DNA of 64,000 bases. Origin: Mytilus edulis (taxonomy: Eukaryota). Below, piece after piece: positions 1 to 56,185 of the stretch (positions within the stretch are counted from its first letter, which is position 1; each line of letters starts with the position of its first letter). The position numbers and the translations under genes were made by a program. Below the pieces are notes generated by a model. It did not search any database, had not been told where the DNA came from, and saw only the letters and a list, made by a program, of their open reading frames with translations. Where the stretch lies: positions 3,596,001 to 3,660,000 of the forward strand of contig NC_092348.1 in assembly GCF_963676685.1 (NCBI RefSeq). The letters are read 5' to 3'.

Positions 1-145
1 TTCATGAATATGACCTACCGAATTAGACTATTTACCGGATTTGTAATCACTTAAGCAACACGACGGGTGCCACATGTGGAGCAGGATCTGCTTACCCTTC
101 CGGAGCACCTGAGATCACCCCTAGTTTTTGGTGGGGTTCGTGTTT
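1..145 (+). mobile_element. 3' tail fragment of Penelope-like retroelement family A
   Basis: Near-identical to 21895-22040 and 53495-53620, which directly follow a Penelope-like RT C-terminus. Confidence 0.65.
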
Positions 146-3100
146 TCTTCTATCAAAAATGTGCAATGCTTGATTAAGAGATTCCTCACTTTCATCCAGA
201 ATCAGAGAGGAGTCATCTGCATATTGACTTAGTAAAAACTCAGAGTCGTTTACTGTGACACCAGAAACAATTGGGTCATATTTAAAAGCTGCACTAAGTA
301 GTTCCAACACAAGGATGAAGAGATAAGGGGATAAAGGATCCCCTTGCCTAACCCCCCTAGCCAAATTTTAAAATTCTGATAAATGTCCATTATTTTTAAC
401 TGTACTGGTAATGTCTATAAAAACATTTTATCCATCTACAAAGTGTGGGACAAAACCCATAAAAATCTAAAGTTTTTTCAATAAAGGACCATTCGACCGT
501 GTCGAAGGCTTTTTCAAATCAACCAGTAATAATATTCCTGGAAAATCTTCTTCTTCTAGTTTATCTATCAGATCTGCAATAATTCTTACACATTCACCAA
601 TGTATCTTCCTTTTAAAAATCCTTTTTTTGTGTCTGACTTATACTATTTTGCAGTAGAGGTTTTAATCTCTTTGCTATGCAAGCAGATGCTAATTTATAG
701 TCAACACATAATAAAGTAATTGGACGCCAATTTTTTATGTAGTGTTTTTCTTTTCCCTCCTTTGGTAAACATACTATTAACCCTTGTCGCTGACTTACTG
801 AGAATTTTCCTTTTTCAAGGCTCTCATTCAGCAATTGACAAGTGGAAATTTTATGTCATTCCAGAAAAAATTATAGAATTCTACAGTAAAACCATCTATG
901 CCTGGTGACTTTAAATTTTTCATATTTTTAAGGGCAATACTGCATTCCTTTAAGGTAATTTGACCCTCACAGGAATTAATCTCTTCTCTGCTAGGTTTAT
1001 TTAAGAAAGGGTTATTTTCATTCATGAATGTGACATTCTCCTCATCCCCTGGGTTAGAACTTCTGTACAAAGTTTCATAAAATAATTTTTGTTCCCTAAG
1101 AATAGCATTTGGATCTTGAATAACTTGATTTCCTTCCAAAAGTAATTTTGATATAATTTTTTCTGTATAATGTTTTTTTTCAAGATCACAAAAGAAACGT
1201 GTATTCTTCTCCCCTTTAACTTGCCATTTTGCCTTTGCTCTTATTATAATTCCATTAATCTTGTCTTCTCTTTAAATTTTAAGTTCTGTTTCAACCTTTT
1301 CAATATCAAGTCTAATTCCATCTGAATTATTTAAAGCAAATAGGTGGTTTAATTTTTCTAATTTTCCAAAAAGCATATTCTCCATCTTGTCTTTTTCTTT
1401 TTTCTTGAATGAAGAGCAAGACATGGCTGTGCCTCTTATTTTCATTTTAATAGTTTCCCAAAGTAATTGATTATCAATTTTGTATGCTTTATCAAGGTTT
1501 TCAAGATCTTCATTTGGATCACATTCATATTCAGATATAACCTCTGTAATATCATGCTTGACTTTTATAATAAAATCAATATCCTTCAATAAACTATTGT
1601 TAAATATCCAAGTCCCTTTTCCCCTGATCTGATTAATAAATTTGAGGTCAATCCTCACTGGTGAGTGGTCAGATCTATAACTAATCCCAATATCTGATGT
1701 CACAACAAACGGCTCTAAGTCCGAAGAAATACAAAAATAATCAAGGCGTCCTTGTTTTTTGTTAGGGCTCCTCCAAGAATATCTTTTAACTGAAGGATTT
1801 TGTATCCTCCAAATATCTAATAAGTCTATAAATATGTTTAAACTAATAAGTCTAAATTATTCATCATTTCATTAATCTTAACTTGAGCTCTGGGATTCAT
1901 TTCAGTCTGATAGTTCAGAGTATCAAGACTATAATTTTGTACTACATTCCAGTCTCCAACAAATATAACTGAAGAATTTTCAAAAAGACAAATTTTGCTT
2001 TCCAATGAACGAAAAAGTTCAGGACAGTCCTCATTTGGACCATACAATGCTACAAGTGTTTGTCTATAATCTTGAACAGTAATATCTAAAATAATGAAAT
2101 TTCCATTGTTATCTATAATTTCATTATTTATTTTAAATTCAAAGGAATTCTTAAACAAGACTGCCACTCCTCTGCTCCTGTTTGAATAGCTACTAAATTT
2201 ACCTGTATATCCCCATTCTTGAAGCCATTTATTTTCATTTTCTAAACAACAGTGAGTATCAACCAACACTGCAATATCATAACGTTTCTTACAAATTGAA
2301 AAAAATATCTAATCTTTTTACCTTATTTGCTAATCCCCTACAGTTTACGGAACCTACAACTATGGATGCCATTGATATACATACACAAATTTTGTCAATA
2401 AAGTAATATCCACATATATTTCACTTTTATATTTGTTGCTGTCTGTCCCAAGTGATTTCTGGTATTAATTGTTCACCTCGTCTTTCTTCTAAGTTATGGA
2501 TCTTTATGTTTTTCTTACGGGAATATTGCTCATTCCAATTTGCCATACGAATCCCTTCTGTTACCCTTGTTTCTATTTGTTTTATCTTTTCTTTCATCTT
2601 TCTGAGTTCTGTATGCAGAGCTGCATTTTTCCCAGTAAATTTGCATTATCAAACTCTATGGAGTCCATTTTCCTGCCAACCATCTCAAATTTTTTTATCA
2701 TAACTCTCCTTCATCTTAACCCTTTAACTTTGTTTACCTCTTCAAGAATCTCTTTTTTTATTTCCGTTTTCCATTTATTTAGTAATTTCCCCATGATATT
2801 GGTGACAATTTCCTCAATGTCATCTTTTTTAACTATCTTATCCATGGATTTTTTTATGTCTTCTAATTCCCTCTCTATACATACAGAGTGATCTGAGCTA
2901 TCTGATATGCATGTACGTGGACGTTTATTAGGGTTAGATTTGTCACTTATATTTGTATTGTTCAAATCGAATACTGATTCAGTTGTATCCACTTTATCTG
3001 TAGGATTATCATTTGAGTTTTTCAATTTCCCCACAGACGCTTTGGACACAAAACTTGTAATTTGGGATTGTGACATCTTCGATAAGTCGAGTACACCCTA

Positions 3101-5557: not shown

Positions 5558-6430
5558 CACAGGCACTTGTCTCAGAATTTTTTTCCCATATACCTTAATA
5601 TAACACAAGGTACTTAATTTGCATTTTCGAAAAATGTCAGGCGGTGACGAAATTCCGTTGTATTCCGCTTGTCAACCCCACAAAAACTTTGTAATATCGT
5701 AAATCTAAATTGATTTATCTTTACAATGGTGTATAAAACGCCTACATTTGTTGTTGGAATCACCCGTAGCAATCCTACCCAAGTATGTCAATCGTAATAA
5801 TTTTTCCAACCGCTGTAAATTTGGCAATAAACGTCTCGCAGTAAATGATTAATTATTAAAACTGTTTAGGAAAAAACTGTTATGTTTTGTCTGAATAGAA
5901 CTTATCACCCAGATAGTAAACTTTTATAAGATACCGTGAAAAAAACCTAACAAGTCTTATTTGTGGTATGTCTAATAAGTTACGAGTTTCCTTTTTTAGA
6001 TTCAAATTTTCCCGTGACGTCAATGTCATTCAGACTCTCTCTTGACTTTACGTATGAAAATGAAACAAGATCAGATAACTCCGAGAATCATTTGACTTTC
6101 CCATTAAATTCACCAATCGGCAACCGAGATATAAGTAGACGTGACGCGTTTATAGCCAAATCATCAGTGGTTGGCAAACTTATTACGATTGAAATACTTG
6201 GGTAGGATTTGCTACGAATGATTCTGACAACAAATGTAGGCATGTTATGCACCATTGTAAAGATAAATTAATTTAGATTTACGCTATAACAAGTGTTAGC
6301 GGGGTTGACAGCCCAGAAAGCGGCATACAACGGAATTTCGTCACCGTCTGACATTTTTCGAAAATGCAAGTTAAGTACCTTGTGTTATATTAAGGTATAT
6401 AGGAAAAAAATTCTGAGACAAGTGCCTGTG
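5558..6430. mobile_element. Non-autonomous foldback-type DNA transposon (hAT- or P-like) with about 285-bp inverted repeats
   Basis: Termini CACAGGCACTTGTCTCAGAATTTTTT / AAAAAATTCTGAGACAAGTGCCTGTG; arms align over about 5558-5840 and 6145-6430; 8-bp target duplication GTCAACTC (5550-5557) / GTCAAATC (6431-6438). Confidence 0.85.
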
Positions 6431-6630: not shown

Positions 6631-6820
6631 GCTATTAGTAGATTAGGTAGTCAGCATATGAAGCAGGAGTGTGACACTTTGAGAACCAAAACTCTTGACC
6701 AAAGTAATCGGGAGATAATGCTAGACATCAAGAATGCATATGATGAAATAAGAGAGTTAAAACATTCAGTAGAGATATTGAAAAAATCAAGTGAAGATAC
6801 AGTACCTTGGAATGTTAGAG
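6631..6820 (+). CDS. NLR-like gene copy 1: coding exon (HEPN C-terminal helix and coiled coil)
   Basis: AG acceptor at 6629-6630, GTAAGT donor at 6821; 190 bp reading AISRLGSQHMKQECDTLRTKTLDQ...DTVPWNVR; same length and phase as paralogous exon 57991-58180; splices in frame to 9058. Confidence 0.9.
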
Positions 6821-7515
6821 GTAAGTCTATTTGGTAAAAAATGCATAATGATTTGGTTCGATAGCATGTTATATTTGAAACTTTTGGAAATGATTATTGG
6901 CGGTATTTAAGGTTAAAGGTTAAGATTTCGAGGCTATGGTTCATATAAAAAATAATTAAACCAAACACTAGGATGTGTATATCAAATACTAGTTAAAAAA
7001 ACAGATAGTTTGAATAAGAAACATTCTTTAGTTGTATTTACCTCCTATCGGCCTTTTTCAAAAGTTTAAAAGTGAATCAACACAAGTGCAACAACAGTAA
7101 CTCCATGAAATAAAAAAAAACCATACACACAGAACATCATATGGTTTTAAATGAAAGACAAGCTAATATGCAAGATGTGATTTCCCCAATAATTAAATCA
7201 ACAAGATATTGAACAGCGATTATCAAAAATCTGTCATCATATTTCCTCGAGAACATAAAACATTTAAATGTAACTTGAGACCCGACTTTCACGTTGAATA
7301 AATGGCTATTGAACACCTAAGATCTACAACAGTTACTAGACATAAGAAGATGATGTATGATTGCTAATGAGACAACTCTCTTTAAAAGTCACTATTTGTA
7401 AAGGTATACTATAAACATTATAAGTACGATCTTCAACACGGAGCCTTGGTTCACACCAAACAGTAATCTAAAACAAAACGGACCAAAAATGCCTGTGTAA
7501 AACGAGAAACAAGAA

Positions 7516-7667
7516 TCACTTATGAACCACATCAACAAACGACAACCACTGAACACCTGGTTACTCACTTATGAACCACATCATCAAACGACAACCACTG
7601 AACACCTGGTTACTCACTTATGAACCACATCAACAAACGGCAACCACTGAACACCTGGTTACTCACT
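7516..7667 (+). repeat. 49-bp tandem repeat, about 3 copies
   Basis: TCACTTATGAACCACATCAACAAACGACAACCACTGAACACCTGGTTAC units start at 7516, 7565 and 7614. Confidence 0.9.
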
Positions 7668-9057
7668 AAGGACAGGTGCAGACAAATGCAGCGGGTTTAA
7701 TCGTTTTAATATGGGTTAAATCCTTCACCCTTACATGAAACAAAAGTGTACATCACAACACAGAAAGACACACTATAAAGTATAAATTGAAATGGCTTAA
7801 CTCAATCAAATGCCAAGTTAACAAAACCAAGTGAACATACACTATACGAATAAATTTGGTCTAAGACACAATGTTAATACAAAATCAAGAAAATAAGGGA
7901 TGATATGTTAAAACATATCAGAAAACAACCATTATCTTGGACAAAGTGTCGCCGATTGAAATATTGTACACAGGTAAAAGAAAATAATTTTGTTGTAAGG
8001 TATACAGTAATGGAGTTCTGAAATATTTTTTACAAAATAAATGACTCTGTTGTTCAAATTACGAGAACAGAAGTGAAAATTTAGTCATACCAAACAATTA
8101 TAAAAGCTGGTATACATAAAAAATGAAGAGACGAGATATAAAACAAAAAAAGTAAACATAAAGGGAAAACATCATTACAAATTGTATCAAGAGGTCAAAT
8201 TATAACAAAAGTACAGTTTGGAAGTACTCGGAGTTACTCAAAGCTAGGTAAAAGCAACAAAAAAACACGATTAATAATAAAAGATCATGTATCAGAGACT
8301 AAAATTAACTAAACACATCCCAGGGATTTAGTATTTTAACGAATTTCTACTTCGTCGACTTCGCCTTTATTTTTATTGTTGCATATAATACCAGTTCTAT
8401 ATGTACAATTTGTTTGATAAAGAAAAAAAGTACAAAAACCTTTACTTTTTCTTTACATAGAAATTTTTACCTGACAAAAGCAATATCACATTAACTGGTA
8501 GTAAATTCAAATGTATTCACTTACAAAATACTCTCAGAGGCTTTATTGACTTAAAAATATTAACTACTTAATAACGAATTTGAATTGGGGAATCTGACTG
8601 ACCTTGGCATAGATCCTACACAGTTTCCTTTTTATCTTCCTACATAAGTAGTATAACATTAACACACCATAAGAGAAAATACTGTGATAAAAATGCAAAA
8701 TTGAATTACCAAACTTATCTCGTAATGCAAATTTCTATTTCGAAACAGGAAATATGTGTAAACTTTTTTCATTTACACTTCTTCTTTTTTATCAAATTTA
8801 GCGTACAATTTTACACAATCACACGATATGCAAGTTTTATTCTCTATCCTGCTGACCATGTTTCACATGTAATAGTAAGTTTCATAGCAATAAATTTTCT
8901 TTAAAAACAAATGGCTAACATGTATCTTGCATTATGCATAAGAGGAGTAAAAGATAAATGTCAGTAAAAGGATATTCCATTTTTTACAGAGGGGAAAGAT
9001 TGAGTTATAAAAATAAAATTTAAACTTGATTATGTTAAAGTTTTTATCGTGTTTTAG

Positions 9058-12000
9058 CACAAATAAAGCAGATACTTGAAGAATGGAAGACAAATGATCA
9101 GATGTATATAAACACCAACGGGGCAGAATATGCATTGAAATGTGTTAAGGAGAAGAGTTGTGTAACTATAACAGCAAGTTCTGGAGTAGGGAAGACAGCT
9201 ACTCTCCGACATGTAGCTTTACAGATGGCAGATGAAGGATACGATGTTCTCTTCGTGAATGAACCAGGTGAAATTGTCAGGTTTTACAATCCAAAGCAGA
9301 AAACATTGTTTGTGATAGATGATTTATGTGGAAACTATTCGTTAAGCCAAATTGACATGAAAAGGTGGGAACCTGTGATGGAACGTTTAGAGAATATTCT
9401 CCAAAAACAAGAGACAAAGATCATTGTCGCATGTCGATTGCAGGTATACCAGGATAACAAGTTTGAATCTTTATCGTTATTTAAGTCATGTGTCTGTAAC
9501 CTGTTATCAGAACTTTTGCGTTTGTCAAAGACTGAAAAACAATTAATAGCTGAGTTATATCTTGGAACAAAAGCTCCACAAGTTATTGGTTATTATGATT
9601 ATCATGATTGTTTTCCCCTTATATGTAAATTGTACAATGACAAATCTGATATGAATATTACAAACTTTTTTCAAAATCCATTTTCAGTTTACGAAGAAGA
9701 GATTGAGAAGCTATCAAAAAAGGGGTACTATGCAAAATATGGTGCTTTGGCTTTATGTGTCATGTTTAACAACAGAATAAATGAAGAAATATTGATAGAC
9801 GATATAGACGACGACACAACATCCGTCATCGAACACACATGTGAGGCATGTAGACTTGACAAAGGGACATCAAGACTTATCTTGAAAGATGAACTCGATT
9901 CATTAATACATACGTATATCAAAAAAGAACAAAATATCTATAAAAGTATACATGACAAAGTATTTGACTTTCTTACTTTTCATTTCGGACAGAAAATAAT
10001 CCAGTGTTTAATTAAGTATGCACATAAGAGGTTGATCTGTGAAAGATTTATATTAGAAAAACAAGATTCTGACCAGTTTATAATAGTTGTGCCTCCTAAG
10101 TTTCATCAAATGTACATACAAAGGTTGATTAACGACTGGTCAAAGGGAATAGTAAATGAAGTATTTTGTAATACCAATATGAATAGTTCACAGTTTAGGA
10201 AAAGATTTTTATGTTTTGTGAATGACCTGGATATATCCTACCAGAGACAATTAGCACATACCTGTGATGTGGAAAACCAAGATACAGCACTGTTACTATC
10301 TTGTTTTGATGGTGATATTCCTATGATTCAATGGTGTTTTAAACATAATGTTGATTGTAATCTATATAGAAATGATGAAACAACTCCTATGGAGATAGCT
10401 GTCCAACAAGGACATACAGAAATAGTACGGGTGTTGTTAGACAGAGGAGTACATTATGATAAATGTAACAATGATGGTTTTTCACCTCTGATGACTGCTT
10501 GTAGCAATGGTTATACAGATATAGTCAATGTTTTGTTAGAAAAAGGAGCAGATTATAACAAATGTCACAATAATGGTTGGTCTCCTGTAACGATGGCCTG
10601 TGGAAATGGGCATTCAAAAATAGTAAAATTGTTTATAGACCATGGCGTTGATTATAACGAATTTGACATAAACCATTCTTCACCCCTAATGATTGCTTGT
10701 GACAATGGACACACAGAAATAGTACGGATGTTGTTAGCTACAGGTGTGGAGTATGTCAAATGCAATATTTATAATTGGTCACCTCTCATGTCTGCCTGTA
10801 AACTTGGATATACTGAAATAGTTGGGATGTTGTTAGAGCAAAGAATAGATTATGATAAATGTAACGAAAGTGATTGGTCACCTATTATGTTTGCTTGTGA
10901 AAACGGACACACAGAAATTGTACAGATGTTGCTTGACAAAGGAGCAGATTATGATAGATGTAACAATAATGAAAGTTCGCCTTTAATGTATGCTTGTAAA
11001 AATGGACATACAGACATAGTAAGGATGTTGTTAGATAAAGGAGCTGATTATGAAAAATGTGATAGAGATTCATTGTCACCATTAATGTTTGCCTGTAACA
11101 AAGATCACATAGAAATAGCTCGGATGTTTTCAGAGAGAACAGCGAGTTATGATATAAGTGGTTGGTCACTTTTAATGTATGCTTGCGACAAAGGACATAC
11201 AGAAATTGTAATGATGCTGTTGGACAAAGGAGCAGATTTTGATAAATGTAACAAAGATGGTAGTTCCCCTTTAATGTTTGCCTGTAGAAATGGACATACA
11301 GAAATAGTAAGAATGTTGTTGGATAGAGGAGCAGAATATGATAGATGTAACAATAATGCAAGCTCGCCTTTAATGTTTGCTTGTAAAACTGGAGATGCCG
11401 AAATAGTAAGGATGTTGTTAGATAAAGGATCAGATTTTAATAATTGTGATAAACATGAGAGGTCACCTGTAATGTTTGCCTGTGATAATGGATTAACGAC
11501 AATAGTAAGGATGTTGTTAGATAGAGGAGCAGATTATGAAAAATGTGATAAAGATGGTTGGACACCATTAATGTTTGCCTGTAACAAAGAACACATAGAA
11601 ATAGCTCGGATTTTGTTAGACAGAAGAGCGAATTATGATAAAAGTGACAAATGTGGTTGGTCACATTTAATGTATGCTTGCGACAAAGGACATACAGAAA
11701 TTGTAGTGATGCTGTTGGACAAAGGAGCAGATTGTGATAAATGTAACAAAGATGGTAGTTCACCGTTAATGTTTGCCTGTAAAAATGGACATACAGATAT
11801 AGTAAGGTTGTTGTTGGAAGGAGGAGCAAATTATGATAAATGTAACAATGATGAACAGACACCTTTAATGTGGGCTTGTAAAAAAAGATATACAGAAATA
11901 GTTAAAATGTTATTAGACAAGGGAGTAGATAATAATAAATGTAACAATGATGGACAGTCACCTTTTATGTGGGCTTGTAAAAAAGGATTTACAGAAATAG

Positions 12001-15000
12001 TTGAAATGTTGTTTGACAAAGGAGTGGATTATAATAAATGTAACAATGATGGACAGTCACCTTTTATGTGCGCTTGTGAAAGTGGAAATAAAGAAATAGT
12101 TAAAATGTTGTTAGACAAAGGAGTAGATTATAATAGATGTGACAATGTTGGACAGTCACCTTTAAGGTGGGCTTGTGAAAAAGGATATACAGAATTAGTG
12201 AAAATGTTGTTAGACAAAGGAGTAGATTATAATAAATGTAACAATGATGGACAGTCACCTTTCATGTGCGCTTGTGAACATGGATGTAAAGAAATAGTTA
12301 AAATGTTGTTAGACAAAGGAGTAGATTATGATAAATGTGACAATTATGGACAGTCACCTTTCATGTGCGCTTGTGAAAATGGATATTTAGAAATAGTTAA
12401 AATGTTGTTAGACAGAGGAGCAGATTATAATCAAAGTAACTTTCATGAATGGTCACCTTTAATATTTGCCTGTGCCATTGGACATACACAAATAGTTAAA
12501 ATGATTTTAGACAAAGGAGGAGATTATGATAAATGTAACAATGATGAACAGACACCTTTAATGTTGGCTTGTAAAAAAGGATTTACAGAAATAGTCAAAA
12601 TTTTGTTAGACAAAGGAGTAGATTATAATAAATGTAACAACGATGGACAGTCACCTTTTATGTGCGCTTACGAAAATGGATATAAAGAAATAGTTAAAAT
12701 GTTGTTAGACAAAGGAGTAGATTATGATAAATGTGACTATGATGGACAGTCACCTTTTATGTGGGCTTGTGAACAGGGATATACAGAAATAGTTAAAATC
12801 TTGTTAGACAAAGGAGTAAATTATAATAAATGTGACAATGTTGGACAGCCACCTTTAATGTGGGCTTGTGAACAGGGATATACAGAAATAGTTAAAATGT
12901 TGTTAGACAAAGTAGTAGATTATAATGAATGTGACAATGATGGACAGTCACCTTTAATGTGGGCTTGTGTAAAAGGATATACAGAAATAGTTAAAATGTT
13001 GTTAGACAAAGGAGTAGATTATAATAAATGTGACAATAATGGACAGTCACCTTTAATGTGGGCTTGTAAAAAAGGATATACAGAAATAGTTAAAATGTTG
13101 TTAGACAAAGGAGCAGATTATGATAAATGTAACAATGATGGACAGTCACCCTTTATGCGTGCTTGTGCAAATAAACATAAAGAAATAGTTGAAATGTTGT
13201 TAGACAAAGGAGTAGATTATGATAAATGTGACAATGATGGACAGTCACCCTTTATGTGCGCTTGTGCAAATGCATATAAAGAAATAGTTAAAATTTTGTT
13301 AGACAGAGGAGCAGATTATAATAAATGTGACAATAATGGATGGTCATCTTTAATATTTACCTGTGCCATTGGACATACACAAATAGTTAAAATGTTGTTA
13401 GACAAAGGAGCAGATTATGATAAATGTAACAATGCTGGAGAATCACCTTTAATGTGCGCTTTTGAATATGGACATACAGAAATAGTTGAAATGCTGTTAG
13501 ACAGAGGAGTTGATTATGAGATATGGGACAAAAATAAAAAGACACCTTTAATGTGTGCGTGTGCCAATGGACACACAAAAGCAGTAAATATGTTGTTAGA
13601 CAGGGGCGTAGATTATAATAAATGTAACAATTATGGACAGTCACCTTTTATGTGCGCTTATGAAAATGGATATAAAGAAATAGTTAAAATGTTGTTAGAC
13701 AAAGGAGTAGATTATAATAAATGTAACAAATATGGACAGTCACCTTTAATGTGCGCTTGTGTAAATGGATATATAGAAATAGTTAAAATGTTGTTAGACA
13801 AAGGAGTAGACTATGATAAATGTGACAAAAAGGGACAGTCACCTTTAATGTGCGCTTGTGTAAATGGATATCTAGAAATAGTGAAAATGTTGTTAGACAG
13901 AGGAGCAGATTATAATCAAAGTAACATTCATGAGTGGTCACCTTTAATATTTGCCTGTGCCATTGGACATACACAAATAGTTAAAATGTTGTTAGACAAA
14001 GGAGGAGATTATGATAAATGTAACAATGATGAACAGACACCTTTAATGTTGGCTTGTAAAGATGGATTTACAAAAATAGTTAAAATGTTGTTAGACAAAG
14101 GAGTAGATTATAATAAATGTAACAATTATGGACAGTCACCTTTTATGTGCGCTTATGAAAATGGATATAAAGAAATAGTTAAAATGTTGTTAGACAAAGG
14201 AGTAGATTATAATAAATGTGACTATGATGGACAGTCACCTTTAATGTGCGCTTGTGAAAATAGATATAAAGAAATAGTTAAAATGTTGTTAGACAAAGGA
14301 GTAGATTATAATAAATGTGACTATGATGGACAGTCACCTTTAATGTGCGCTTGTGAAAATGGATATAAAGAAATAGTTAAAATGTTGTTAGACAAAGGAG
14401 TAGATTATGATAAATGTAACAATGATGAACAGACACCTTTAATGTGGGCTTGTAAAAAAGGATTTACACAAATAGTTAAAATGTTGTTAGACAAGGGAGT
14501 AGATTATGATAAATATGACAATTATGGACAGTCACCTTTAATGTGCGCTTGTGAAACTGGATATATAAAAATAGTTAAAATGTTGTTAGACAGAGGAGCA
14601 GATTATAATAAATGTGACAATGATGGACAGTCACCTTTAATGTGCGCTTGTGAAAATGGATATATAGAAATAGTTAAAATGTTGTTGGACAAAGGAGTAG
14701 ATTATGATAAATGTAACAATGATGGACAGTCACCCTTTATGTGCGCTTTTAAAAAGGAATATAAAGAAATAGTTAAAATGTTGTTAGACAAAGGAGTAGA
14801 TTATGATAAATGTGACAATGATGGACAGTCACCTTTAATGTGCGCTTGTGAAAATGGAGATATAAAAATAGTTAAAATGTTGTTAGAAAGAGGGGCAAAT
14901 TATAATCAAAGTAACATTCATGAATGGTCACCTTTAATATTTGCCTGTGCCATTGGACATACACAAATAGTTAAAATGTTGTTAGACAAAGGAGTGGATT

Positions 15001-15650
15001 ATGATAAATGTAACAATGTTGGAAAGTCACCTTTAATGTTCGCTTGTGAAAATGGATGTACAGAAATAGTTGAAATGTTGTTAGACAGAGGAGTTGATTA
15101 TGAGATATGGGACGAAAATGAAAAGACACCTTTAATGTGTGCGTGTGCCAATGGACACACAAAAGCAGTAAATATGTTGTTAGACAGAGGAGTAGATTAT
15201 AATAAATGTAACAATGATGGACAGTCACCTTTTGTGTGCGTTTGTACAAATGGATGTACAGAAATAGTTAAAATGTTGTTAGACAAAGGAGTAGACTATA
15301 ATAAATGTAACAATGATGGACAGTCACCTTTAATGTGCGCTTGTGAAAATGGATATATAGAAATAGTTAAAATGTTGTTAGACAAAGGAGTAGATTATGA
15401 TAAATGTGACAATGATGGACAGACACTTTTAATGTTGGCTTGTAAAAAAGGATTTACAAAAATAGTTAAAATGTTGTTAGACAAAGGAGTAGATTATAAT
15501 AAATGTAACAATTATGGACAGTCACCTTTTATGTGCGCTTATGAAAATGGATATAAAGAAATAGTTAAAATGTTGTTAGACAAAGGAGTAGATTATAATA
15601 AATGTGACTATGATGGACAGTCACCTTTAATGGTCGCCTGTGAAAATTGA
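9058..15650 (+). CDS. NLR-like gene copy 1: terminal exon encoding a STAND-class (nSTAND3-like) NTPase and 54 complete ankyrin repeats
   Basis: TTTTAG acceptor at 9056-9057 in frame with the 2182-aa ORF; Walker A VTITASSGVGKT, Walker B LFVIDDLCG, sensor-1-like KIIVACR, CFP at the GxP position; ankyrin repeats from 10281; ends at a TGA that replaces a Gly codon. Confidence 0.92.
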
Positions 15651-16770
15651 TATATAGAAATAGTTAAAATGTTGTTAGACAAAGGAGTAGATTATGATAA
15701 ATGTGACAATGATGGACAGTCACCTTTAATGTGCGCTTGTAAAAATGGATATATAGAAATAGTGAAAATATTGTTAGACAGAGGAGCAGATTATAATCAA
15801 AGTAACATTCATGAGTGGTCACCTTTAATATTTGCCTGTGCCATTGGACATACACAAATATTTAAAATGTTGTTAGACAAAGGAGGAGATTATGATAAAT
15901 GTAACAATGATGAACAGACACCTTTAATGTTGGCTTGTAAAAAAGGATTTACAGAAATAGTTAAAATGTTGTTAGACAAAGGAGTAGATTATGATAAATG
16001 TAACAATGATGGACAGACACCTTCAATGTGGGCTTGTAAAAAAGGATTTACAGAAATAGTTTAAATGTTGTTAGACAAAGGAGTAGATTATAATAAATGT
16101 AACAATGATGGACAGTCACCTTTTAATGTGCGCTTGTGAAAATTGATGTACAAAAATAGTTAAAATGCTGTTAGACAGAGGAGTTGATAATGAGATACGG
16201 GACAAAAATGAAAAACACCTTTAATGTGTGTGTGTGCCAATGGACAAACAAAAGCAGTAAATATGTTGTTAGACAGAGGAGTAGATTATAATGAATGTGA
16301 CAATGTTGCACAGACACCTTTAATGTACACCTGTATACATAGACAAACAGAAATAGTAAACATTTTGTTAGACAGAGGAGTCGATTATAATAAATGTGAT
16401 AAGGATGGACAGTCACCTTTAAATTGCGCTTGTGCCAATGGACACAAAGATATTGTTATAATCAATGTAACAAGGATAATCAGACACCTTTAATATGTGC
16501 TTGTTGACATGGTCATTTAGAAATCGTAGTAATATTTTTAGACAAAGGAGTAGATTATAATAGAAGTGAAAGTGATGATCAGACACCTTTGATATCGGCC
16601 TGTGCTTATGGACATACATAAATAGTAAACCTGTTGCTAGACAGAGGTGTACTGACGTAGTCATGATAATGTTCGACAGTGAAGTATATTATAACAAATG
16701 TAAAAATGCTAAACCGACACTTTATGCGTGATTGTGCTAACGGACACACAAAAATCGCACCCTTGCTCTA
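10281..16770 (+). repeat. Coding tandem array of 99-bp ankyrin units (about 65, including degenerate units after the stop)
   Basis: Strict 99-bp phase checked at 11856, 12450, 13341, 13935, 14925 and 15816; one early unit is 9 bp short; consensus QSPLMCACENGYxEIVKMLLDKGVDYNKCNNDG. Confidence 0.95.
15651..16770 (+). pseudogene. Decaying ankyrin units downstream of the copy 1 stop codon
   Basis: In-frame continuation to TAA 16062-16064, then a +1 T frameshift at about 16121, TGA 16144, further indels and an internal deletion near 16455. Confidence 0.85.
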
Positions 16771-18326
16771 CCTACGGTAGACAGAGCTCCTGGATAATAA
16801 ATGAGAAATATCGATATTATAGGTAGCAATTTCGCTAGTTTTTATTTGATGTGACTTTATTTGACATTTTTTACTGGTGTTCAAAAACGTTTGAGTGCAA
16901 TTTGAAGGGCAGACTGAAGACATTGGAATGAAAGTCAAAAACAGAACATTTTAATCAGACAATGAAAAAATCTAGATAGCTTTAGAGGGAAAAAATTGCA
17001 ATGTACATAAAAATAAATAGAGAGAGGTTTAGAATTGATGGGCGATTAACAAACTGTCAGACAGGAGATCGCATTGCTACTTATGGTCCGATCCCAGCAC
17101 TTCTTATTGGTAAATATAGAGCGATTGTTCTCCACATGTGTCAAGAAGACACACAAAACAATCAAATGCATAAAAATGTATACATGAGGGGAATAAGCTT
17201 TTTGAATACCCAATTGCAAATGACTGGGTCAGTAGAACGTGCGGCGGCATTTGGCAAACATCTTATTACTGTACTGCTTTTTTGAACGACTGGATTTGTT
17301 ACGCCTTTGGAAATCCAGCCACGGGGCACAACTATGTAATGCTGATTTTGTCTCTTTCAGTGCAGATAGCCAATCAGAACCCGATTCAGACTCAAACGGC
17401 ACATCTAGTCATCGGGAAAATTAGCAAATTTGATAAACCCAAATTATTAGATCATTCAAATTCATAAAACAACTTTCATCCAAACACAAATAATTGAAAC
17501 TGAAATGAAATAAGACAGTAACATGCAATAAAATCAATCAAGCCAAAAAAAAAAAAACCACGAGAAAGCTGTTTCCACAGATGAAAAGAGGCAGTTTATA
17601 AAAGCTAAACAACTTAAAGTTCAAAAGGTCAAACAACTGCCTTCTATCGCTCAGCAAAGCAAGCAACACTTCTTAAACGAAGCTTTAAGATCTCGTACTC
17701 AAGCACAAAATAGTGAAACAAAAAAGTCAATAAACAAAAAAACTCCTACTGATGACCTGCAAGAAAGAAAGAGAAAGAAAAAACAACAGTATGTTAAATT
17801 CCTGTTAAAAAGAAAAGAAACTTTCACTTTACATTTGTATGTTTTTAATTTCATTCAATATGTATTTCATATTTGTGTTTGCTTTATAAAATAACCATAG
17901 ACTGTGTTTATTAAATTATGACTTTATTAATATTAATATAAACATAGTTTTTGAATGTGATGTCTTTATAAATGATTGAATGCATTCAAAGAAGAAGAAA
18001 TTACATACATGTAAACAGTTATCTAAAAATCTGTAAAATATTTCAACTATAGCTAAACCTCTAAACGAAGACTGTTTAGTAATTGAAAACGTTTTTGTAA
18101 ATAAAGAGAAAAGAACTTTATCTAAATTCAAACACTGTTATGTCCTTTTAACTGGATTTGTATTCATCAACTGTAAAAAAAAAAAAAGCAATAGTTCTGT
18201 AAAATATTCTGTTGATATGTCCTATAGTATTCACTTAAAATATATCGTTATTAGTTCGGCAACTATTCAGGTGAGCATTCCTTGAAATCTCACAAAAAAT
18301 ATATAGTTTTTATAAACGGTAAATGT

Positions 18327-18661: not shown

Positions 18662-18799
18662 TTATGCTTAATAAACTCTCAAAGTCCATTTCTCTAGGAT
18701 GTCAACTTACAAATTTCCATATATGGGTACAATCAGTCGAAATATCAATGTCAAAAAATAATGCTGTGTCAAAACTATATCGTCCCATAACTCTTGTAT

Positions 18800-20003
18800 T
18801 CAATTCATTGGTTTACTTCGTATTTAGCTGATAGACATCAAGTAGTATCAATTTCAAATACTTTTTCAGATGTATCTACATTAAAAGCAGGTGTAGCTCA
18901 AGGGTCCGTTTTAGGTCCTATATTATTCTTAATATTTATTAATGATTTGCCTTTGTGTAATCCTAATCCTAATCTTGATCTTTTTGCTGATGATAGCACT
19001 ATTTCTGTAATTGGAAAAGACAAAAGGTATATTATTCAGACACTCAATGTTGTATTAGAAAATATTTGTCAATGGGTTGATGAAAACAAAATGTTAGTTA
19101 ATGTGTCAAAAACTAAGACAATGTGTATAGGTTCAAAACAAAAACTGTCTGTGATGTGTAATGACACATTAAATGTATCCATTAATGGCCAAAAGGTTAA
19201 TGAAAGTCACTGTGAAAAAGTCCTGGGTATTTTTGTTGACAAAACTCTTTCTTGGTATGATCAAATTAATCATATAATCAAAAAGTTAATTCTTCATTAG
19301 CTTTATTAAAAAGAATCAAGAAATACTTGAATCACAATGCACGAATTCTATTTTACAATGCGTATATTCTTCCACATTTGGATTACTGCTGTTCAGTATG
19401 GGGAAACTGTAACAAGTTTTTAGTTGACAGTTTACTAAAATTGCAAAAAAGGGCAGCTAGAATTATTTTTAACGAACACGATATTCGTAAACCATCTTTT
19501 GAACTATTTAAGGAATCTGGAATTATTCCTGTTACTAAGAGAATATTTGACCACAAATCATTATTAATGTATAAATCAAAACACCAACTGGCACCAAAAT
19601 ATTTATCCAATCTTATTGTGCCTACAAGTAGTAAACAATCGTACAATACTCGGCTTTCATCATCGGATAATTTTATTGTCCCTAAATCAAATACAGAATT
19701 ATACAAATCAAGTTTTTCTTTTAGTGGTCCAAAAATGTGGAATTCACTGTCCAGTGAAATTAAAAAATCAAAAGGTATATCTGCATTCAAAAACTCTTAC
19801 AAGTCATTTTATTTTTAAAAGTGTTGAATTTATAAGTTAAGGCACAATGTATACCATAGTTGTTTTTGTTGTTGTTGTTATATTACTTTATATAGGTCTA
19901 TTGTTTACATGTGTGTTATAGTAGATTAATTATTATTTTATTCATATTGTTAACATTGTATATGTAGAGAGCCTTATTGAAAATTGTTTTAATCCAAATG
20001 AGC
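18800..20003 (+). mobile_element. 5'-truncated CR1/L2-type LINE (RT domain and 3' UTR) running into the gap
   Basis: WFTSYLADR, GVAQGSVLGPILFLIFINDLP, LFADD, YILPHLDYCCSVWG, LQKRAARII, GPKMWNSL; one frameshift in an A-run at about 19280; absent from duplication copy B. Confidence 0.9.
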
Positions 20004-20145
20004 NNNNNNNNNNNNNNNNNNNNNNNNNNNNNNNNNNNNNNNNNNNNNNNNNNNNNNNNNNNNNNNNNNNNNNNNNNNNNNNNNNNNNNNNNNNNNNNNN
20101 NNNNNNNNNNNNNNNNNNNNNNNNNNNNNNNNNNNNNNNNNNNNN
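20004..20145. other. Assembly gap (142 N)
   Basis: Run of n characters. Confidence 1.
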
Positions 20146-26356: not shown

Positions 26357-28983
26357 CGGATAATTTAACCAAATTCTATTAGAGGAAAAAGTACCATCAA
26401 CGTTTAAAACCGGAACAGTATCTCCGATTCTGAAGAAAGGAAAGGCATTCTATGAGGTAGAAAATTACCGTGGTATAACAGTCACATCAGTTATTGGAAA
26501 AGTATTTGAATATATCATTTTGGATAAATCTAACTTAATGAAATCGGGTCAATCTCCTTTACAGTTTGGTTTTACACAAGGACTATCTCCAAACATGGCA
26601 GCCCTAATACTTTCGGAGGCATGCTCAGAGATAACAGGAAAACAAACCATTTTCGTCACAACACTCGACAGTCAAAAAGCATTTGATGTTGTAAGTCACG
26701 TAATACTGATGGACAGGCTATATCACTACGGACTAAATCTGAATTTGTGGAACATTATCGAGGAGCTATATAGCGGCGTAACATCAACAGTAAAATGGAA
26801 AGGAGAAACAAGTACAAGCTTTGAAATACACCAGGGCGTGCGACAAGGAGGTGTCCTATCTACTCACCTATATAAGGCCTACATAAACGAACTGCTTCTA
26901 GATCTGCAAAAACGAAATCTAGGTTCTCATATAGGCAACAATTATGTTGGATGTCCTGCTTGCGCAGATGATATCGTACTTTTATCCCTCAATAGAGAAG
27001 AAATGCAAGAAATGCTGAATATTGTCGATAATTACTCAAAAGACCATCGATTTAACATCCATCCTCAAAAGAGTAATGTTATAATAAAGACTGGAAATAA
27101 ACGTAAAGATCCTGAAGATAGCGATGCTTTTAAAATGGGGAACAATGATTTAAATTGTACGGATCGTACAACCCACCTAGGCCTAACAAGATCAACAAAA
27201 GATGAAACCCGAATAAATGTAGATGATCGCATAAGTTTAGCCAGAAGAACATTATACTCTCTCATAAAGACTGGTGTACATGGCTCAAATGGTTTAAATC
27301 CTAAAACTTCATATAGGATCTATCAAGCATACGTCCTACCAAGGCTACTGTACGGGCTTGAAACTCTACATGTGAATTCTAAAGAAATGTCGCTTCTTTC
27401 AAGCTTCCACCTCGATACCTTGAGAAAACTTCAGTCTCTTCCGAAAAGGACAGCATGTGCATCAGTATACCTACTTCTGGGAGCTCTACCGCTTATTGCT
27501 GAAATTCACAAAAGACAACTTAGCCTCTTATTTGGTGTGCTCAATAGCGACAATGAAACTATTAGATCACTAGCTATGCGTCAATATATGTCCGGAAGAT
27601 CAACAAGCTTCTTCACCAAAACAGCAGAAATTTTAGAGATGTACAACCTACCTTTCTTTCTGGAATTATGCGAAAAGAAGTATTCAAAAATAGAATGGAA
27701 AAAACGGACAAAATCAGCAATAAACGGTCATTGGACTAACAAACTACGCCTAGAATGTGAAGAAAAATCAACTCTACAAAATTTAACAATTTCGAACTTA
27801 ACAATAGGTGTCACACATCCTGTTTGGGCTACAGTTTCTTCATCAGTCTCGGACATTAGAAAAGCAATTACAAAAAGCCGCATGTTAACGGGAACCTATC
27901 TATTACAAGCTCATAGACACAGATTTAACCAGGCCGAAGTAGACCCGATTTGTCCAAACTGTAGAACTGAGAACGAAGACCTATGTCATGTGTTAACAAC
28001 TTGTCCATTGTATATGAACATCAGGATAGCGTTATATACTCCAATTAAGAACTTTATAGTGAGTATTATATCTGAATCAACATGGGCAACTCACTTCAGT
28101 AACCGTGAGGCAATATGTACACTTATAGTAGACTGTCAAAGCTTCGCAAATCTGAACATTATACCGAACAACCCAGAAATACTTGGAAAGATTGAAAATA
28201 TGTCCAGAATATACTGCTATGAAATTCACAAAAAGAGACTATCAACCGAGATATAACATTTCCCTGGGTATCACAGCTCCCCATAAAGACACTAATAACA
28301 ATATTTACCACCATGTGTCTATATCTGATATATATCATAAATAGTAAAATAGTTGCCGTAATTAAAATACTTTAGTGTGATGTTTATGCATAAATATTTA
28401 GAACGTTAATATCTGCTTGCTTAACTATAATATACACCATATATACAAGCCTGAACGTGTGTACTGTGCAAGACTTTAAAATTTGAGTACAATGTAGAAC
28501 TAACTCTTATAACGCAAAAATATATCATTGCTTATTAACAAAGATATCAACATTAGATAGAAAATAACCATCTGTAGCATCCTCTAAATGCATAGTATTT
28601 TAGCTTGCACTTCTTGGCTCCCATATGAATGAAGACCTTTTAATTCATTAACTCTATCCAGTGAATTCAACAGCCAAAATAGTTAATTGATCTTATTTAA
28701 CTAGACATTACTTTTATCACCGTATCTACATCCTGGATAACGGAGGAATCTACCTGAACAAAACAGAACCTGGATAATGAATGGGTAATCCGTGTATATA
28801 ATATGTACATTTCTGTAAATAAATTTTGTGCATGTGCAACGTTCTGGTGGAGGATTTCATTACAATTTGGAATAACTTGTGGATATTATAACATTTTTAA
28901 AAACTAATCCGTTAAGGAAACACAGCTAGCTGTGTGTGCTCCAACACTGGAGGGATTTACATAAAGAAGAAGAAGAAGAAGAA
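26357..28983 (+). mobile_element. Young 5'-truncated non-LTR retrotransposon (RTE-X-like) with an intact RT and CCHC finger
   Basis: Frame open from 26364 to 28256: ENYRGITVTS, QFGF, LDSQKAFD, GVRQGGVLS, CADD, C-terminal CPNC...H...C; about 700-bp 3' UTR ending in a (GAA)n tail at 28966-28983. Clade call is tentative. Confidence 0.88.
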
Positions 28984-51884: not shown

Positions 51885-52634
51885 TTTTTAGCTCACCTGG
51901 TCCGAAGGGCCATGTGAGCTTTTCTCATCACTGGGCGTCCGTCGTCCGTCGTCCGTCGTCGTCGTTAACTTTTTACATTTTGAACTTCTTCTAGAGAACC
52001 ACTGAATGGAATGTAACCAAACATAGCATGAATGTTCCTTATGAAGTGCTGACCAAGTGTTGTTACTTTGTAGCCGAGGCTTTATCTAAGATGGTCGCCA
52101 GCGGGGGACTTAGTTTAACATAGGACCCTATGGGAAATGCATACACACGACTTCTTTTAGAGAACCACCAAAGGGAATGTAAGCAAACATAGCATGAATG
52201 TTCCTTATGAGATGCTGACCAAGTGTTGATACTTTGTAGCCGATCCATCATCCAAGATGGCCGCCAGCGGGGGACTTAGTTTAAACATAGGACCCTATGG
52301 GAAATGCATACGGATGACTTCGTTTAGAGAACCACTGAATGGAATGAAACCAAACATAGCATGAATGTTCTTTACGAGGTGCTGACCAAGTGTTGTTACT
52401 TTGTAGCCGATCCATCATATAAGATGGCCGCCGGAGGGAGACTTGGTTTAACATAGGACCCTATGGAAAATGCATACAAATGACTTCTTTTAGAGCATCA
52501 CTGAATGGAATGAAACCAAACATAGCATGAATGTTCCTGATGAGATGCTGACCAAATTTTATCTTTTTTTATATGATTTCAAAAACCCAAGTAGAGTCAG
52601 GTGAGCGATACAGGCTCTTGAGAGCCTCTAGTTT
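51885..52634 (+). mobile_element. Helentron-associated non-autonomous element (HINE/DINE-like) with an internal 166-167-bp satellite
   Basis: Subterminal inverted repeats GCTCACCTG (51891) / CAGGTGAGC (52598); GTC/GTCC microsatellite; repeat units at 51993, 52159, 52326 and 52492; 3' hairpin AGGCTC-TTGA-GAGCCT; T-rich flanks. Shorter similar elements at about 47090-47348 and 51425-51612. Confidence 0.85.
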
Positions 52635-54272: not shown

Positions 54273-54489
54273 ATGGCATCACTTTCACCAGAAGAAGAAA
54301 ACTTTGTGAGACTTAACTTGTTACTGACAGGAATTTCTCCTCGCGCAGTGCGTACCTTGTTTGATTATGAATTTGCTCCAGTTTGTCTAGATGCAACACT
54401 GAAGAAAGAGTTCAACAAACTGAGAGATCTTCAAAAGAAACGTGTAATTAATCAGTCGCAGTGGAACTTACTGACCCCAAGGTTTCCTG
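54273..54489 (+). CDS. NLR-like gene copy 2: first coding exon (N-half of DZIP3-type HEPN)
   Basis: AAAATGG start context; MASLSPEEENFVRLNLLLTGISPRAVRTLFDYEF...INQSQWNLLTPRFP; GTAAGT donor at 54490 (phase 1); candidate acceptor TTTTTCAG at 54093 implies an upstream non-coding exon. Confidence 0.85.
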
Positions 54490-55846
54490 GTAAGTACATA
54501 TAAACCGGGTTATTGCCTTACTTACTCAATCTTTTGTTTTCTATGTTGTGTTTTGTTTACTATTGTTTGTCTCTTGGTATTTTTTTGTTTTTAGCCATGG
54601 CGTTGTTAGTTTATTTTCGACTTGGAAGTTTAAATGTCCCTTTGGAATGTTTCGTATCTCTTTTATCCCTACATTTCTTGGTAAGTATGTAGAATTATAC
54701 AAGTCATAGTGGAACTAATTTATCCCTAGACTTCCTGGTGAGTTCAGAGACACAAGCAGCTAAATGATAGTTACAGTAGAAATAACTTTTCGCTAGATTT
54801 CGTTGTTAGCACCGTCAAAAATTTTAAATATCAAATATCTACGTATAGTGGTATCAGTTAATATTTTTGCAATCAAAATTCATCAGAAATCTAGGAAAAG
54901 TTGTAAAAGAGAGGCGAATATAAATAAATAAAACAGTTACAAGGACAACAACTTACGATGTTGTTGACATGTTACAAAGACATAAACATGATATGTTCAT
55001 TTTATTTTAATTTCGTTAGAGTGCATATAAATTGAACTAAAAATGCACATATAAAGGCCATCTAATGTAGATCAGAATTGGAAATGCCAGGAACTAATAA
55101 ATGATGGTATAATAAGGTTTTTTTTTGTTCCATTCAGATAACATATGCTATCTATAACAACTTAATTGTACATTTTGTTGCTATTTCATCTAGGCGTACA
55201 AAATTTGTCTATGATGAGTTTATTTCCGTATTGTTCAGGAACCTTTTTACAAATGAAGAACATAAATCTTTTTTTTTATTAACAACATAATAATATTTAT
55301 TTATCTAATCTTGTTTGTTACAAATTTAACCAAGAGTCCTACAACGTAAATCTTCTTAATAAAGGCAACAGTAGTATACCGCTGTTCGGTAGTCATAAAT
55401 CGATTGAAAGGGGGAAAATCAGGGGAAGACGAAACGCGCGATTGGCGTACTAGATCATAATCCTGGTACCTTTAATAACTATTTACAAACCAATACTGAA
55501 GGAAACACATCAACTATAAGATGAAAACAACGAAACAATAGAAACAAAAAGTGCAACAAAAAACAAAACTTCAATGCAACAAAATATACTCATGGACCGA
55601 GCATCTCGCGCTTTTGTGTAAATTTTGAATATAACACTAAAATGACAACGTTACATGACAGGACTACAGTAAAAATAAATGCAAGAACATTCAGGACAGA
55701 AATATACACAACTAAACATTACAATAGGACATTTCGACATGCTAATAATAATTAAAGGTACCAGGCTGATAGTTTAATACACCATACGTACAAACTTACA
55801 AACTTCTATAGATACTGCTGTACTTATATATTATTATTTCCCCCAG

Positions 55847-56076
55847 ATTCTCCAGATTCCAAGAACTTTGATGTTACTCTAATGAGTTTACTTCTAAGAA
55901 ATCTCACAACAATAGCCCCTCCTCATGGAGGGTATGACAATTTGCCTTCATCATCAGAAACGACACCTGCTGCTGACTTGGCCAGAATAAAGTATTACAG
56001 AAATGTCCTCGCTCATCTAGATGATGGTAATATACAGAATACCGAGTTTTCCGCAGCATGGGATGATATTACTGGT
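55847..56076 (+). CDS. NLR-like gene copy 2: second coding exon (HEPN core with RNVLAH)
   Basis: CCCCAG acceptor, in frame with exon 1; DSKNFDVTLMSLLLRNL...ADLARIKYYRNVLAH...AWDDITG; GTAAGC donor at 56077 (phase 0). Confidence 0.88.
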
Positions 56077-56185
56077 GTAAGCAGCATTTAATTCATATTT
56101 TTCTAGTTAAAATTTTTTGTTATGGTCATGATAATATAATTCTGTGTTGTATATATTGAACATAGGGATACTACTATTGTCTTGA

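What the first reader, a model, noticed from the sequence alone, without database searches (positions are those of the whole stretch)
11856..15650. Near-identical ankyrin units with variation focused on the binding face
Seen: from repeat 17 onward the 99-bp units share an almost fixed scaffold (EIVKMLLDKGVDYxKC, QSPxM), while a few positions toggle: the residue before AC (W/C/F/L/R), the pair after it (KK, EN, EQ, AN, VN, AI, ET) and the hairpin (NND, DYD, DNY, NKY, DKK). Established: helix 1 and the beta-hairpin form the ankyrin binding groove randomised in DARPins, and fungal NLRs such as HET-E diversify high-identity repeats in a similar way. Inference: a recombination-rewritable recognition surface in an invertebrate receptor.
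Basis: partly seen in the sequence, partly recalled or inferred. Interest (0 to 1): 0.8.

Follow-up and report, generated by a model that had tools for sequence, protein, structure and literature searches.

The report
Mussel immune-like gene's diversifying ankyrin array
A blue-mussel gene built like an innate-immune sensor carries about 53 similar ankyrin repeats whose predicted ligand-contacting residues change faster than silent sites, the pattern known from fungal immune receptors, but this copy is cut short by a stop codon and nothing shows rewriting within one animal.

Summary
Window 10410-16442 holds 61 tandem 99-bp ankyrin units in one large exon, fused to an nSTAND3 NTPase. HEPN RNase exons lie about 17 kb upstream.

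At the six positions randomised in DARPins, chosen beforehand, nonsynonymous change runs at about 1.9 times the synonymous rate (p = 2e-4). Framework positions run at 0.58. Variation also touches positions 16-18, 8 and 31, so "focused on the binding face" holds as an enrichment only.

The first five units match the neighbouring paralogue unit for unit. The central units match only each other, which indicates germline concerted evolution with patchwork block exchange.

The pattern holds across the family: at least 98 paralogues in this genome, some far more homogenised (68 units, most with a 100% identical twin), and 101 of 126 Mytilus proteins examined.

This copy ends at a GGA-to-TGA stop at 15648 and is followed by a decaying tail. 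The RefSeq model covers only 8 units. No expression or between-individual data could be obtained, so somatic rewriting is untested.

It is a new member of a known kind: receptors with highly internally conserved repeats, described in fungi and noted in animals only in surveys. The scan had already met this gene family on other DNA.

The parts
6631..6825 (+). Coiled-coil linker exon (AISRLGSQHMKQECDTLRTK...TVPWNVR) between the HEPN exons and the NTPase exon
   Evidence: tblastn of Mytilus family proteins P0001-P0005, residues about 150-229, 50-58% identity. Translation is open. The exon is also used in RefSeq model P0034.
9045..10367 (+). Start of the large exon: nSTAND3 P-loop NTPase (Walker A GVGKT at 9186-9200, Walker B LFVIDD) plus a helical/winged region and an N-terminal capping half-repeat
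   Evidence: Pfam PF20720 nSTAND3 scores 94.5 bits against a cut-off of 27.2, covering profile positions 1-152 of 155. A ttttag acceptor lies just upstream of the match that begins at 9045 (tblastn). At least 98 paralogues are present in the genome.
10368..11843 (+). Ankyrin units 1-15: diverged 5' units, one of them 93 bp long
   Evidence: Units 1-5 are 77-91% identical to the same-position units of the neighbouring paralogue but only 72-78% identical to siblings in their own array. Logan contigs of three runs cover 10145-11695.
11844..15647 (+).
   Evidence: Each unit is 91-100% identical to a sibling but only 70-80% identical to any unit of the neighbouring paralogue, and at most 84% to any unit of the five other arrays compared. 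Omega is 1.94 at the DARPin positions and 0.58 at framework positions. AlphaFold gives pLDDT 91 with helix 1 at positions 7-14 and helix 2 at positions 17-25.
15648..15650 (+). Premature TGA stop inside a unit, where siblings have GGA (Gly15)
   Evidence: Sequence ...tgtgaaaat TGA tatatagaa.... The ORF 9102-15650 encodes 2182 aa.
15651..16800 (+). Untranslated remainder of the same array, about 11 units and decaying
   Evidence: Aligned to the unit consensus, it shows further in-register stops at about 16062, 16144, 16505 and 16619, and frame-breaking indels at about 16121 (+1), 16210 (-1), 16456 (-28), 16648 (+35) and 16721 (-2). The block 15649-16006 is 95.5-96.6% identical to blocks inside the ORF.

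Best explanation
This is the sensor arm of one copy of a very large Mytilus family of NLR-like STAND genes. The family architecture is a DZIP3-type HEPN (predicted RNase) head, a coiled coil, an nSTAND3 NTPase switch and a long ankyrin solenoid.

The array evolves in the germline by unit duplication, unequal crossing-over and short-tract conversion, which keep the framework of the central units alike. Selection favours amino-acid differences at the residues that line the concave groove: hairpin positions 1-3 and 5, and helix-1 positions 10, 13 and 14. This is the 'high internal conservation' (HIC) repeat regime described for fungal NLRs.

By analogy with other STAND receptors, ligand binding on the ankyrin groove would release NTPase-driven oligomerisation and activate the HEPN effector.

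What is shown: the architecture, the fold, the site-specific excess of nonsynonymous change, array-specific homogenisation, and the family-wide pattern. What is inferred: ligand sensing, activation and RNase output.

This copy lost its 3' end to a nonsense mutation. The 6.6-kb frame upstream is still clean, so it was kept by selection until recently, or still is.
For: Architecture:
- nSTAND3 scores 94.5 bits.
- HEPN_DZIP3 scores 66 bits on the upstream exon and carries an RNFLAH (Rx4H) motif.
- The exon order matches family proteins.

Fold and register:
- phmmer against solved structures gives E = 5e-93 to ankyrin-1/2 and 5e-91 to a DARPin, in one register.
- The AlphaFold model has pLDDT 91.

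Selection:
- Pairwise pN/pS over the central units is 1.17.
- Counts on a minimum spanning tree give S = 45 and N = 211.
- Omega is 1.94 at DARPin positions 2, 3, 5, 13, 14 and 33 (p = 1.7e-4) and 0.58 at 16 framework positions (p = 0.006).
- The homogenised paralogue arrays L034, L036 and L037 show the same pattern, with omega 2.2-3.0.

Concerted evolution:
- The 5' units are positional orthologues of the neighbour's units. The central units match only siblings.
- Blocks of 180-360 bp at 94-97% identity occur at offsets of 1 to 35 units.

Constraint on the frame:
- There are no disabling lesions in 6.6 kb of ORF, against at least 10 in the 1.15-kb tail.

Family-wide pattern:
- 101 of 126 family proteins from five Mytilus species have similarity to the array consensus of at least 0.70. 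Their most variable positions are 1, 3, 2, 5, 14, 13, 10 and 9.
Against: - Omega over the whole unit is about 1.0, so much of the array is only weakly constrained.
- Positions 16-18, at the helix turn and the start of helix 2 and not on the classical groove, also vary fast in this array.
- The minimum-spanning-tree and Nei-Gojobori count is not a full codon model, and recombination between units violates tree assumptions.
- The gene ends in a premature stop and lacks the C-terminal cap that paralogues keep.
- RefSeq annotates only a 764-aa product with 8 units and no HEPN.
- No RNA read was laid from the one RNA run tried.
- The link between the HEPN exons 17 kb upstream and this exon is by order and homology only.
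- No ligand, expression or between-individual data were obtained.
Confidence: 0.7

Rival explanations
1. Neutral accordion in a dying gene. The array is a recent tandem expansion in a copy that is already a pseudogene. Surface positions vary simply because nothing constrains them, and the apparent excess of nonsynonymous change is a by-product of short sequences, recombination and the counting method.
For: Omega over all 33 positions is about 1.0. A premature stop is followed by a decayed tail. The RefSeq model stops after unit 8. No RNA reads were laid. Other scan notes report truncated giant arrays in this family.
Against: Omega at positions chosen beforehand is 1.94, significantly above 1, while framework positions are significantly below 1. 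The same split appears in three intact paralogues that keep a proper C-terminal cap. No stop or frameshift occurs in 6.6 kb, against at least 10 in the next 1.15 kb.
Confidence: 0.2
2. Somatic rewriting. Recombination among the units, with the silent tail as a donor store, reshuffles the recognition surface within an individual, as lamprey VLR genes or chicken Ig pseudogene conversion do.
For: Only permissive evidence. Many similar cassettes lie in tandem. A silent block behind the stop is 95-97% identical to blocks inside the ORF. Joints between distant units appear in Logan contigs.
Against: Those joints rest on about 20 nt at the shorter side in de Bruijn contigs of a repeat, which is below the tool's own 30-nt caution. 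The tail is full of frameshifts and stops, as expected of plain decay. The family has hundreds of germline copies that differ in array content, which already accounts for the diversity. No dedicated flanking cassette store or recombination signal was seen.
Confidence: 0.03
3. Assembly artefact. The length and order of the units are mis-assembled from long reads, so the unit-to-unit comparisons are unreliable.
For: Public short-read contigs do not span the central array. One 200-bp bin (14900-15099) has no depth in two runs.
Against: The unique 5' part is reproduced exactly in two runs and at about 99% in a third. The frame is unbroken over 2182 codons. The same pattern is seen in six arrays of this genome and in annotated proteins of five species. 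Site-wise conclusions depend on unit sequences, not on their order.
Confidence: 0.05

Closest known systems
Fungal NLRs with highly internally conserved (HIC) repeats: HET-E/D/R (WD40) and the Podospora PNP_UDP/NACHT/ANK gene Pa_3_8560 (Dyrka et al. 2014, PMC4986451; Ament-Velasquez and Saupe 2026, PMC13449251)
   Same: Effector, STAND NTPase and superstructure-forming repeats in one protein. Repeats are kept alike by intragenic exchange. Positive selection acts on a handful of positions that map to the inner helix and hairpin of the ANK groove. Unit number differs widely between family members.
   Different: The NTPase is nSTAND3, not NACHT or NB-ARC, and the effector is a DZIP3-type HEPN domain. 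This is an animal genome with hundreds of copies, and the arrays are far longer (53-68 units here). This array meets the loose HIC criterion (similarity to consensus 0.73-0.78, threshold 0.70) but not the strict 85% one. Polymorphism between individuals was not shown here.
Animal DZIP3/hRUL138-like HEPN proteins fused to NACHT-type NTPases, ankyrin, CARD, Death or LRR, with lineage-specific expansions in Nematostella and oyster (Anantharaman et al. 2013, PMC3710099); Pfam nSTAND3 PF20720
   Same: Same domain families in the same order. A bivalve lineage-specific expansion.
   Different: That work describes domain architectures. It does not describe repeat-level homogenisation or site-specific diversification of the ankyrin arm.
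Designed ankyrin repeat proteins (DARPins)
   Same: The same 33-residue register. The naturally variable positions here (2, 3, 5, 13, 14) coincide with five of the six library positions on the concave face (alignment; PMC8229355).
   Different: Position 33 is a conserved Cys here. Positions 1, 9-10 and, in this array, 16-18 vary as well. This is natural evolution, not a designed library.
Somatically assembled repeat receptors (lamprey VLR)
   Same: Solenoid repeat cassettes serve as the variable recognition surface.
   Different: No evidence here of somatic assembly, of a germline-incomplete gene, or of flanking donor cassette banks. The diversity seen is between germline copies.

Membership tests
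Ankyrin repeat (Pfam clan Ank) | 33-residue helix-turn-helix-hairpin units matching the Ank profiles and stacking into a solenoid | tested here: met
   Ank_2 scores 120.5 bits against a cut-off of 27.3. phmmer gives E = 5e-93 to ankyrin-1/2 chains. The AlphaFold model has pLDDT 91 with two helices per unit.
nSTAND3 NTPase (PF20720) | Profile match above the gathering score, with Walker A and Walker B intact | tested here: met
   94.5 bits against a cut-off of 27.2, covering profile positions 1-152 of 155. GVGKT and LFVIDD are present.
HEPN_DZIP3 (PF18738) | Profile match and the Rx4-6H catalytic motif, in the same gene | tested here: inconclusive
   The upstream exon scores 66.1 bits against a cut-off of 27 and carries RNFLAH. 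It lies about 17 kb upstream, across LINE fragments. Joining it to this exon rests on exon order and homology only. RefSeq model P0034 does not include it.
HIC (high internal conservation) NLR-type receptor | Effector, STAND NTPase and repeat architecture | tested here: met
   with the caveat on the HEPN link given in the HEPN_DZIP3 row.
HIC (high internal conservation) NLR-type receptor | Repeats highly similar to one another: T-REKS Psim of at least 0.70 (PMC13449251), or at least 85% identity over at least 100 aa (PMC4986451) | tested here: inconclusive
   A similarity-to-consensus measure computed here (not T-REKS itself) gives 0.73 for all 53 units and 0.78 for the central 38. That passes 0.70 and fails 0.85. 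Paralogues L034, L037 and L036 reach 0.86-0.88.
HIC (high internal conservation) NLR-type receptor | Positive selection confined to a few positions on the binding surface | tested here: met
   Omega is 1.94 at DARPin positions (p = 1.7e-4) and 0.58 at framework positions. This is a counting method, not HyPhy or PARRIS.
HIC (high internal conservation) NLR-type receptor | Repeat-number and repeat-content polymorphism between individuals | tested here: inconclusive
   Logan contigs of three runs do not span the central array. No haplotig is present in the assembly. Array length does differ widely between paralogues, with open frames running from a few hundred aa to 2694 aa.
Somatically diversified receptor | Sequence differences between tissues or cells of one individual | not testable with these tools
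   No same-individual multi-tissue long reads were available.

The most novel reading that the evidence does not exclude
Beyond germline turnover, mussels might reshuffle these ankyrin cassettes somatically, for example in haemocytes, using silent in-array units as donors. That would give an anticipatory repertoire from an NLR-like gene family. Nothing seen here requires it, and nothing here tests it.
Probability: 0.03. Interest if true: 0.95.

Novelty: new member of a known kind. Interest (0 to 1): 0.5.

Why it matters
If the family-wide pattern holds up, mussels use in hundreds of HEPN-STAND-ankyrin genes the diversification strategy known from fungal NLRs: a rigid, homogenised repeat scaffold with a selected, shuffled binding face. 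That would be a convergent route to a large and fast-evolving intracellular sensor repertoire in an animal without adaptive immunity.

It would also offer a concrete place to look for the basis of mussel resistance to viruses or to transmissible cancers.

It gives testable residues (positions 1-3, 5, 9-10, 13-14) and testable loci. The more homogenised paralogues, such as those at C1:125.47 Mb and C1:66.31 Mb, are better subjects than this truncated copy.

Tried and rejected
- **Higher-order repeat.** I looked for a clean multi-unit period. Diagonal scans show none, only scattered blocks of 2-3.6 units. The repeat finder output was uninformative for this array.
- **Between-individual variation and expression.** The single read-laying run gave short Logan contigs that resolve only the diverged 5' units. 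The 'joints' have about 20 nt on the shorter side and were disregarded. RNA run X23 laid no read from about 6% of the run, which is not a test.
- **Second haplotype in the assembly.** None was found. The nearest DNA is the neighbouring paralogue at 80% identity.
- **Orthologue with a comparable array in other Mytilus proteomes.** The best full-length relative is 69% identical in the NTPase. The only 100% match is the truncated RefSeq model P0034.
- **Solvent accessibility.** Model coordinates are not exposed to scripts, so positions were mapped by register against DARPin and ankyrin chains and by the model's helix boundaries.
- **Post-hoc 'face' set.** I replaced that set with the a priori DARPin set for the significance test.
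- **Spliced protein.** The exons were searched one by one.

Full report
**What is there**

The window is G000:C5:3596001-3660000 of a 1.37-Gb genome. Contig lengths equal those recorded for Mytilus edulis RefSeq proteins (C1 126,317,657 for P0002; C5 97,338,103 for P0034).

Tandem Repeats Finder reports one array at 10410-16442: period 99, 61 copies, 80% matches. A 2182-codon ORF at 9102-15650 contains it.

The first 433 residues of the ORF are an nSTAND3 P-loop NTPase (PF20720, 94.5 bits against a cut-off of 27.2). The match begins at 9045, just downstream of a ttttag acceptor.

Family proteins from other Mytilus species carry PF18738 (HEPN_DZIP3) ahead of nSTAND3 and ankyrin. By tblastn, this gene has the following exons:
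- a coiled-coil exon at window 6631-6825;
- two HEPN exons about 17 kb upstream, at C5:3584885-3585100 and about C5:3585805-3586044.

The second HEPN exon scores 66 bits on PF18738 and carries RNFLAH. LINE fragments fill the long intron. I searched the exons one at a time and built no joined product.

**The observation**

In frame, the units from about 11844 on read like NNDGQSPLMCACENGYTEIVKMLLDKGVDYNKC.

The wording needs tempering in two respects:
- The central units average 85% DNA identity and 67% protein identity, though each has a sibling at 91-100%.
- Positions 8, 16-18, 21, 26, 28 and 31 also vary, so 39 units carry 35 different scaffold strings.

**Register and fold**

phmmer against solved structures aligns the units with ankyrin-1/2 (E = 5e-93) and a DARPin (E = 5e-91) in a single register.

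In that register the DARPin's own variable residues fall at positions 2, 3, 5, 13, 14 and 33. That these are the library positions is my knowledge of the Binz/Plückthun design. PMC8229355 states that DARPins bind through the randomised positions on the concave face.

An AlphaFold model of eight units has pLDDT 91. Helix 1 spans positions 7-14 and helix 2 spans positions 17-25. Positions 10, 13 and 14 therefore lie on one side of helix 1, and positions 1-5 lie in the hairpin.

**Is the variation more than relaxed constraint?**

| Measure | Value |
|---|---|
| Pairwise Nei-Gojobori pS, central units | 0.136 |
| Pairwise Nei-Gojobori pN, central units | 0.160 |
| Synonymous changes on the spanning tree (37 unique units) | 45 |
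| Nonsynonymous changes on the spanning tree | 211 |
| Omega, all positions | about 1.0 |
| Omega, six DARPin positions (a priori) | 1.94 (binomial p = 1.7e-4) |
| Omega, 16 framework positions | 0.58 (p = 0.006) |

Seven groove positions, 21% of the unit, take 43% of the nonsynonymous changes. Positions 16-18 take another 15%, at a rate about 1.6 times the silent rate (calculated). 'Focused on the binding face' is therefore an enrichment, not an exclusive pattern.

The method is a count, not a codon model, and recombination among units breaks tree assumptions. Ignoring transition bias makes it conservative.

**Recombination**

Units 1-5 are 77-91% identical to the same-numbered units of the tandem paralogue at 54273-64000 and beyond, but only 72-78% identical to their own siblings. 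Units 16-53 are 91-100% identical to a sibling and only 70-80% identical to any unit of that paralogue. Across the NTPase and first units the two genes are 80% identical in DNA.

The centre of the array has therefore been rebuilt in place since the gene duplication.

There is no regular higher-order period. Instead, blocks of 180-360 bp at 94-97% identity recur at offsets of 1 to 35 units. That pattern fits repeated unequal exchange or short-tract conversion in the germline.

**State of this copy**

At 15648 a GGA codon has become TGA. The array continues for about 11 more units. These carry four further in-register stops and at least five frame-breaking indels. Paralogues end in a conserved capping unit that this gene has lost.

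There are no lesions in the 6.6 kb before the stop, against at least 10 in the 1.15 kb after it. This argues that the upstream frame was kept by selection while the tail decayed.

RefSeq's product for the locus (P0034, 764 aa) is much shorter than the ORF:
- it starts at 5726;
- it uses exons 6631-6825 and 9045-11087;
- it then removes 46 nt and stops at 11152;
- it therefore has eight units and no HEPN domain.

I could not test that model. The single reads call showed the diverged 5' units in three DNA runs: identical in two, and about 1% different in a third under another species label. It left the central array unresolved, and an RNA run laid no read.

**The family**

At least 98 loci in this genome match the NTPase, out of 550 first-look candidates. 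Their open frames run from a few hundred aa to 2694 aa.

| Array | Gap-free units | Mean unit DNA identity | Mean unit protein identity | Omega at DARPin positions |
|---|---|---|---|---|
| L034 | 68 | 91% | 81% | 2.99 |
| L036 | 47 | 89% | 79% | 2.23 |
| L037 | 36 | 89% | 78% | 2.15 |
| This window | 53 | 78% | 60% | 1.94 |

Identities are means over all gap-free units of each array.

In L034 most units have a 100% identical twin. In L034 and L037 the framework GHTEIVRMLLDIGADYNKC is nearly invariant, and the differences sit at positions 1-3, 5, 9, 10, 13 and 14. Those arrays are clearer examples than the one in this window.

Among 126 annotated family proteins from five Mytilus species, 101 have similarity to their array consensus of at least 0.70 and 29 of at least 0.85. 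The positions most often among the six most variable are 1, 3, 2, 5, 14, 13, 10 and 9.

**Comparison with what is known**

- The domain combination was described computationally in 2013: DZIP3-type HEPN with NACHT ATPase, ankyrin and other domains, expanded in Nematostella and oyster (PMC3710099).
[quoted passage not shown] In those ANK repeats the selected sites map to the inner helices and the hairpin (PMC4986451).
- A 2026 survey reports that HIC repeats associated with ATPase domains, nSTAND3 included, also occur in animals (PMC13449251, section read).
- I found no paper describing this for mussels or measuring site-wise selection there.
- Other agents of this scan had already recorded the gene family, and a truncated giant array with a decaying tail, elsewhere in this genome.

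**Verdict**

It is unproven about 'rewriting', and it overlooks that this copy is truncated.

This is a new member of a known kind. Its interest lies mainly at the family level.

Noticed in passing
window 5726-5779, 11088-11152: RefSeq model P0034 (764 aa) for this locus starts at a small exon at 5726. It removes a 46-nt 'intron' inside the irregular 93-bp unit, which shifts the frame to a stop at 11152. So the annotation leaves out the HEPN exons and 45 of the 53 units.
   Followed up: partly
window 15648-15650 and about 16144: The same Gly15 codon change (GGA to TGA, context AAT TGA T) occurs in two different units of the tail. Either the stop was copied by a later unit duplication or conversion, or it arose twice.
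   Followed up: partly
window 54273-64000 (continues in L032): A tandem paralogue has all four exons (54273-54488, 55831-56085, 57991-58203 and 62451 onwards). It has one TAA inside the NTPase region and a more diverged array of 36 gap-free units. Another agent of this scan has already reported it.
   Followed up: partly
window 10885-11862, 13387-13644, 14971-15249 (minus strand); L034 plus strand: Long open frames run antisense to the ankyrin arrays, up to 158 aa here and up to 754 aa in paralogue L034. They are most simply explained by the repeat unit having no stop in that frame.
   Followed up: no
window 92-2269 (-), 18794-19818 (+), 26520-28256 (+): Reverse-transcriptase-like ORFs of LINE-type elements flank the gene. 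The 92-2269 fragments lie in the long intron between the HEPN exons and the coiled-coil exon.
   Followed up: no
window 20004-20145: A run of 142 N (assembly gap or masked stretch), which I left untouched.
   Followed up: no
window 51984-52555 and 7516-7667: Unrelated tandem repeats: 166 bp x 3.4 copies at 88% matches, and 49 bp x 3.1 copies at 97% matches.
   Followed up: no
L034 (G000:C1:125472261-125482260, minus strand): A paralogue has 68 ankyrin units in which runs of about 30 units recur almost exactly (residues about 611-1540 against 1574-2500). This is either a very recent multi-kilobase internal duplication or an assembly expansion.
   Followed up: no
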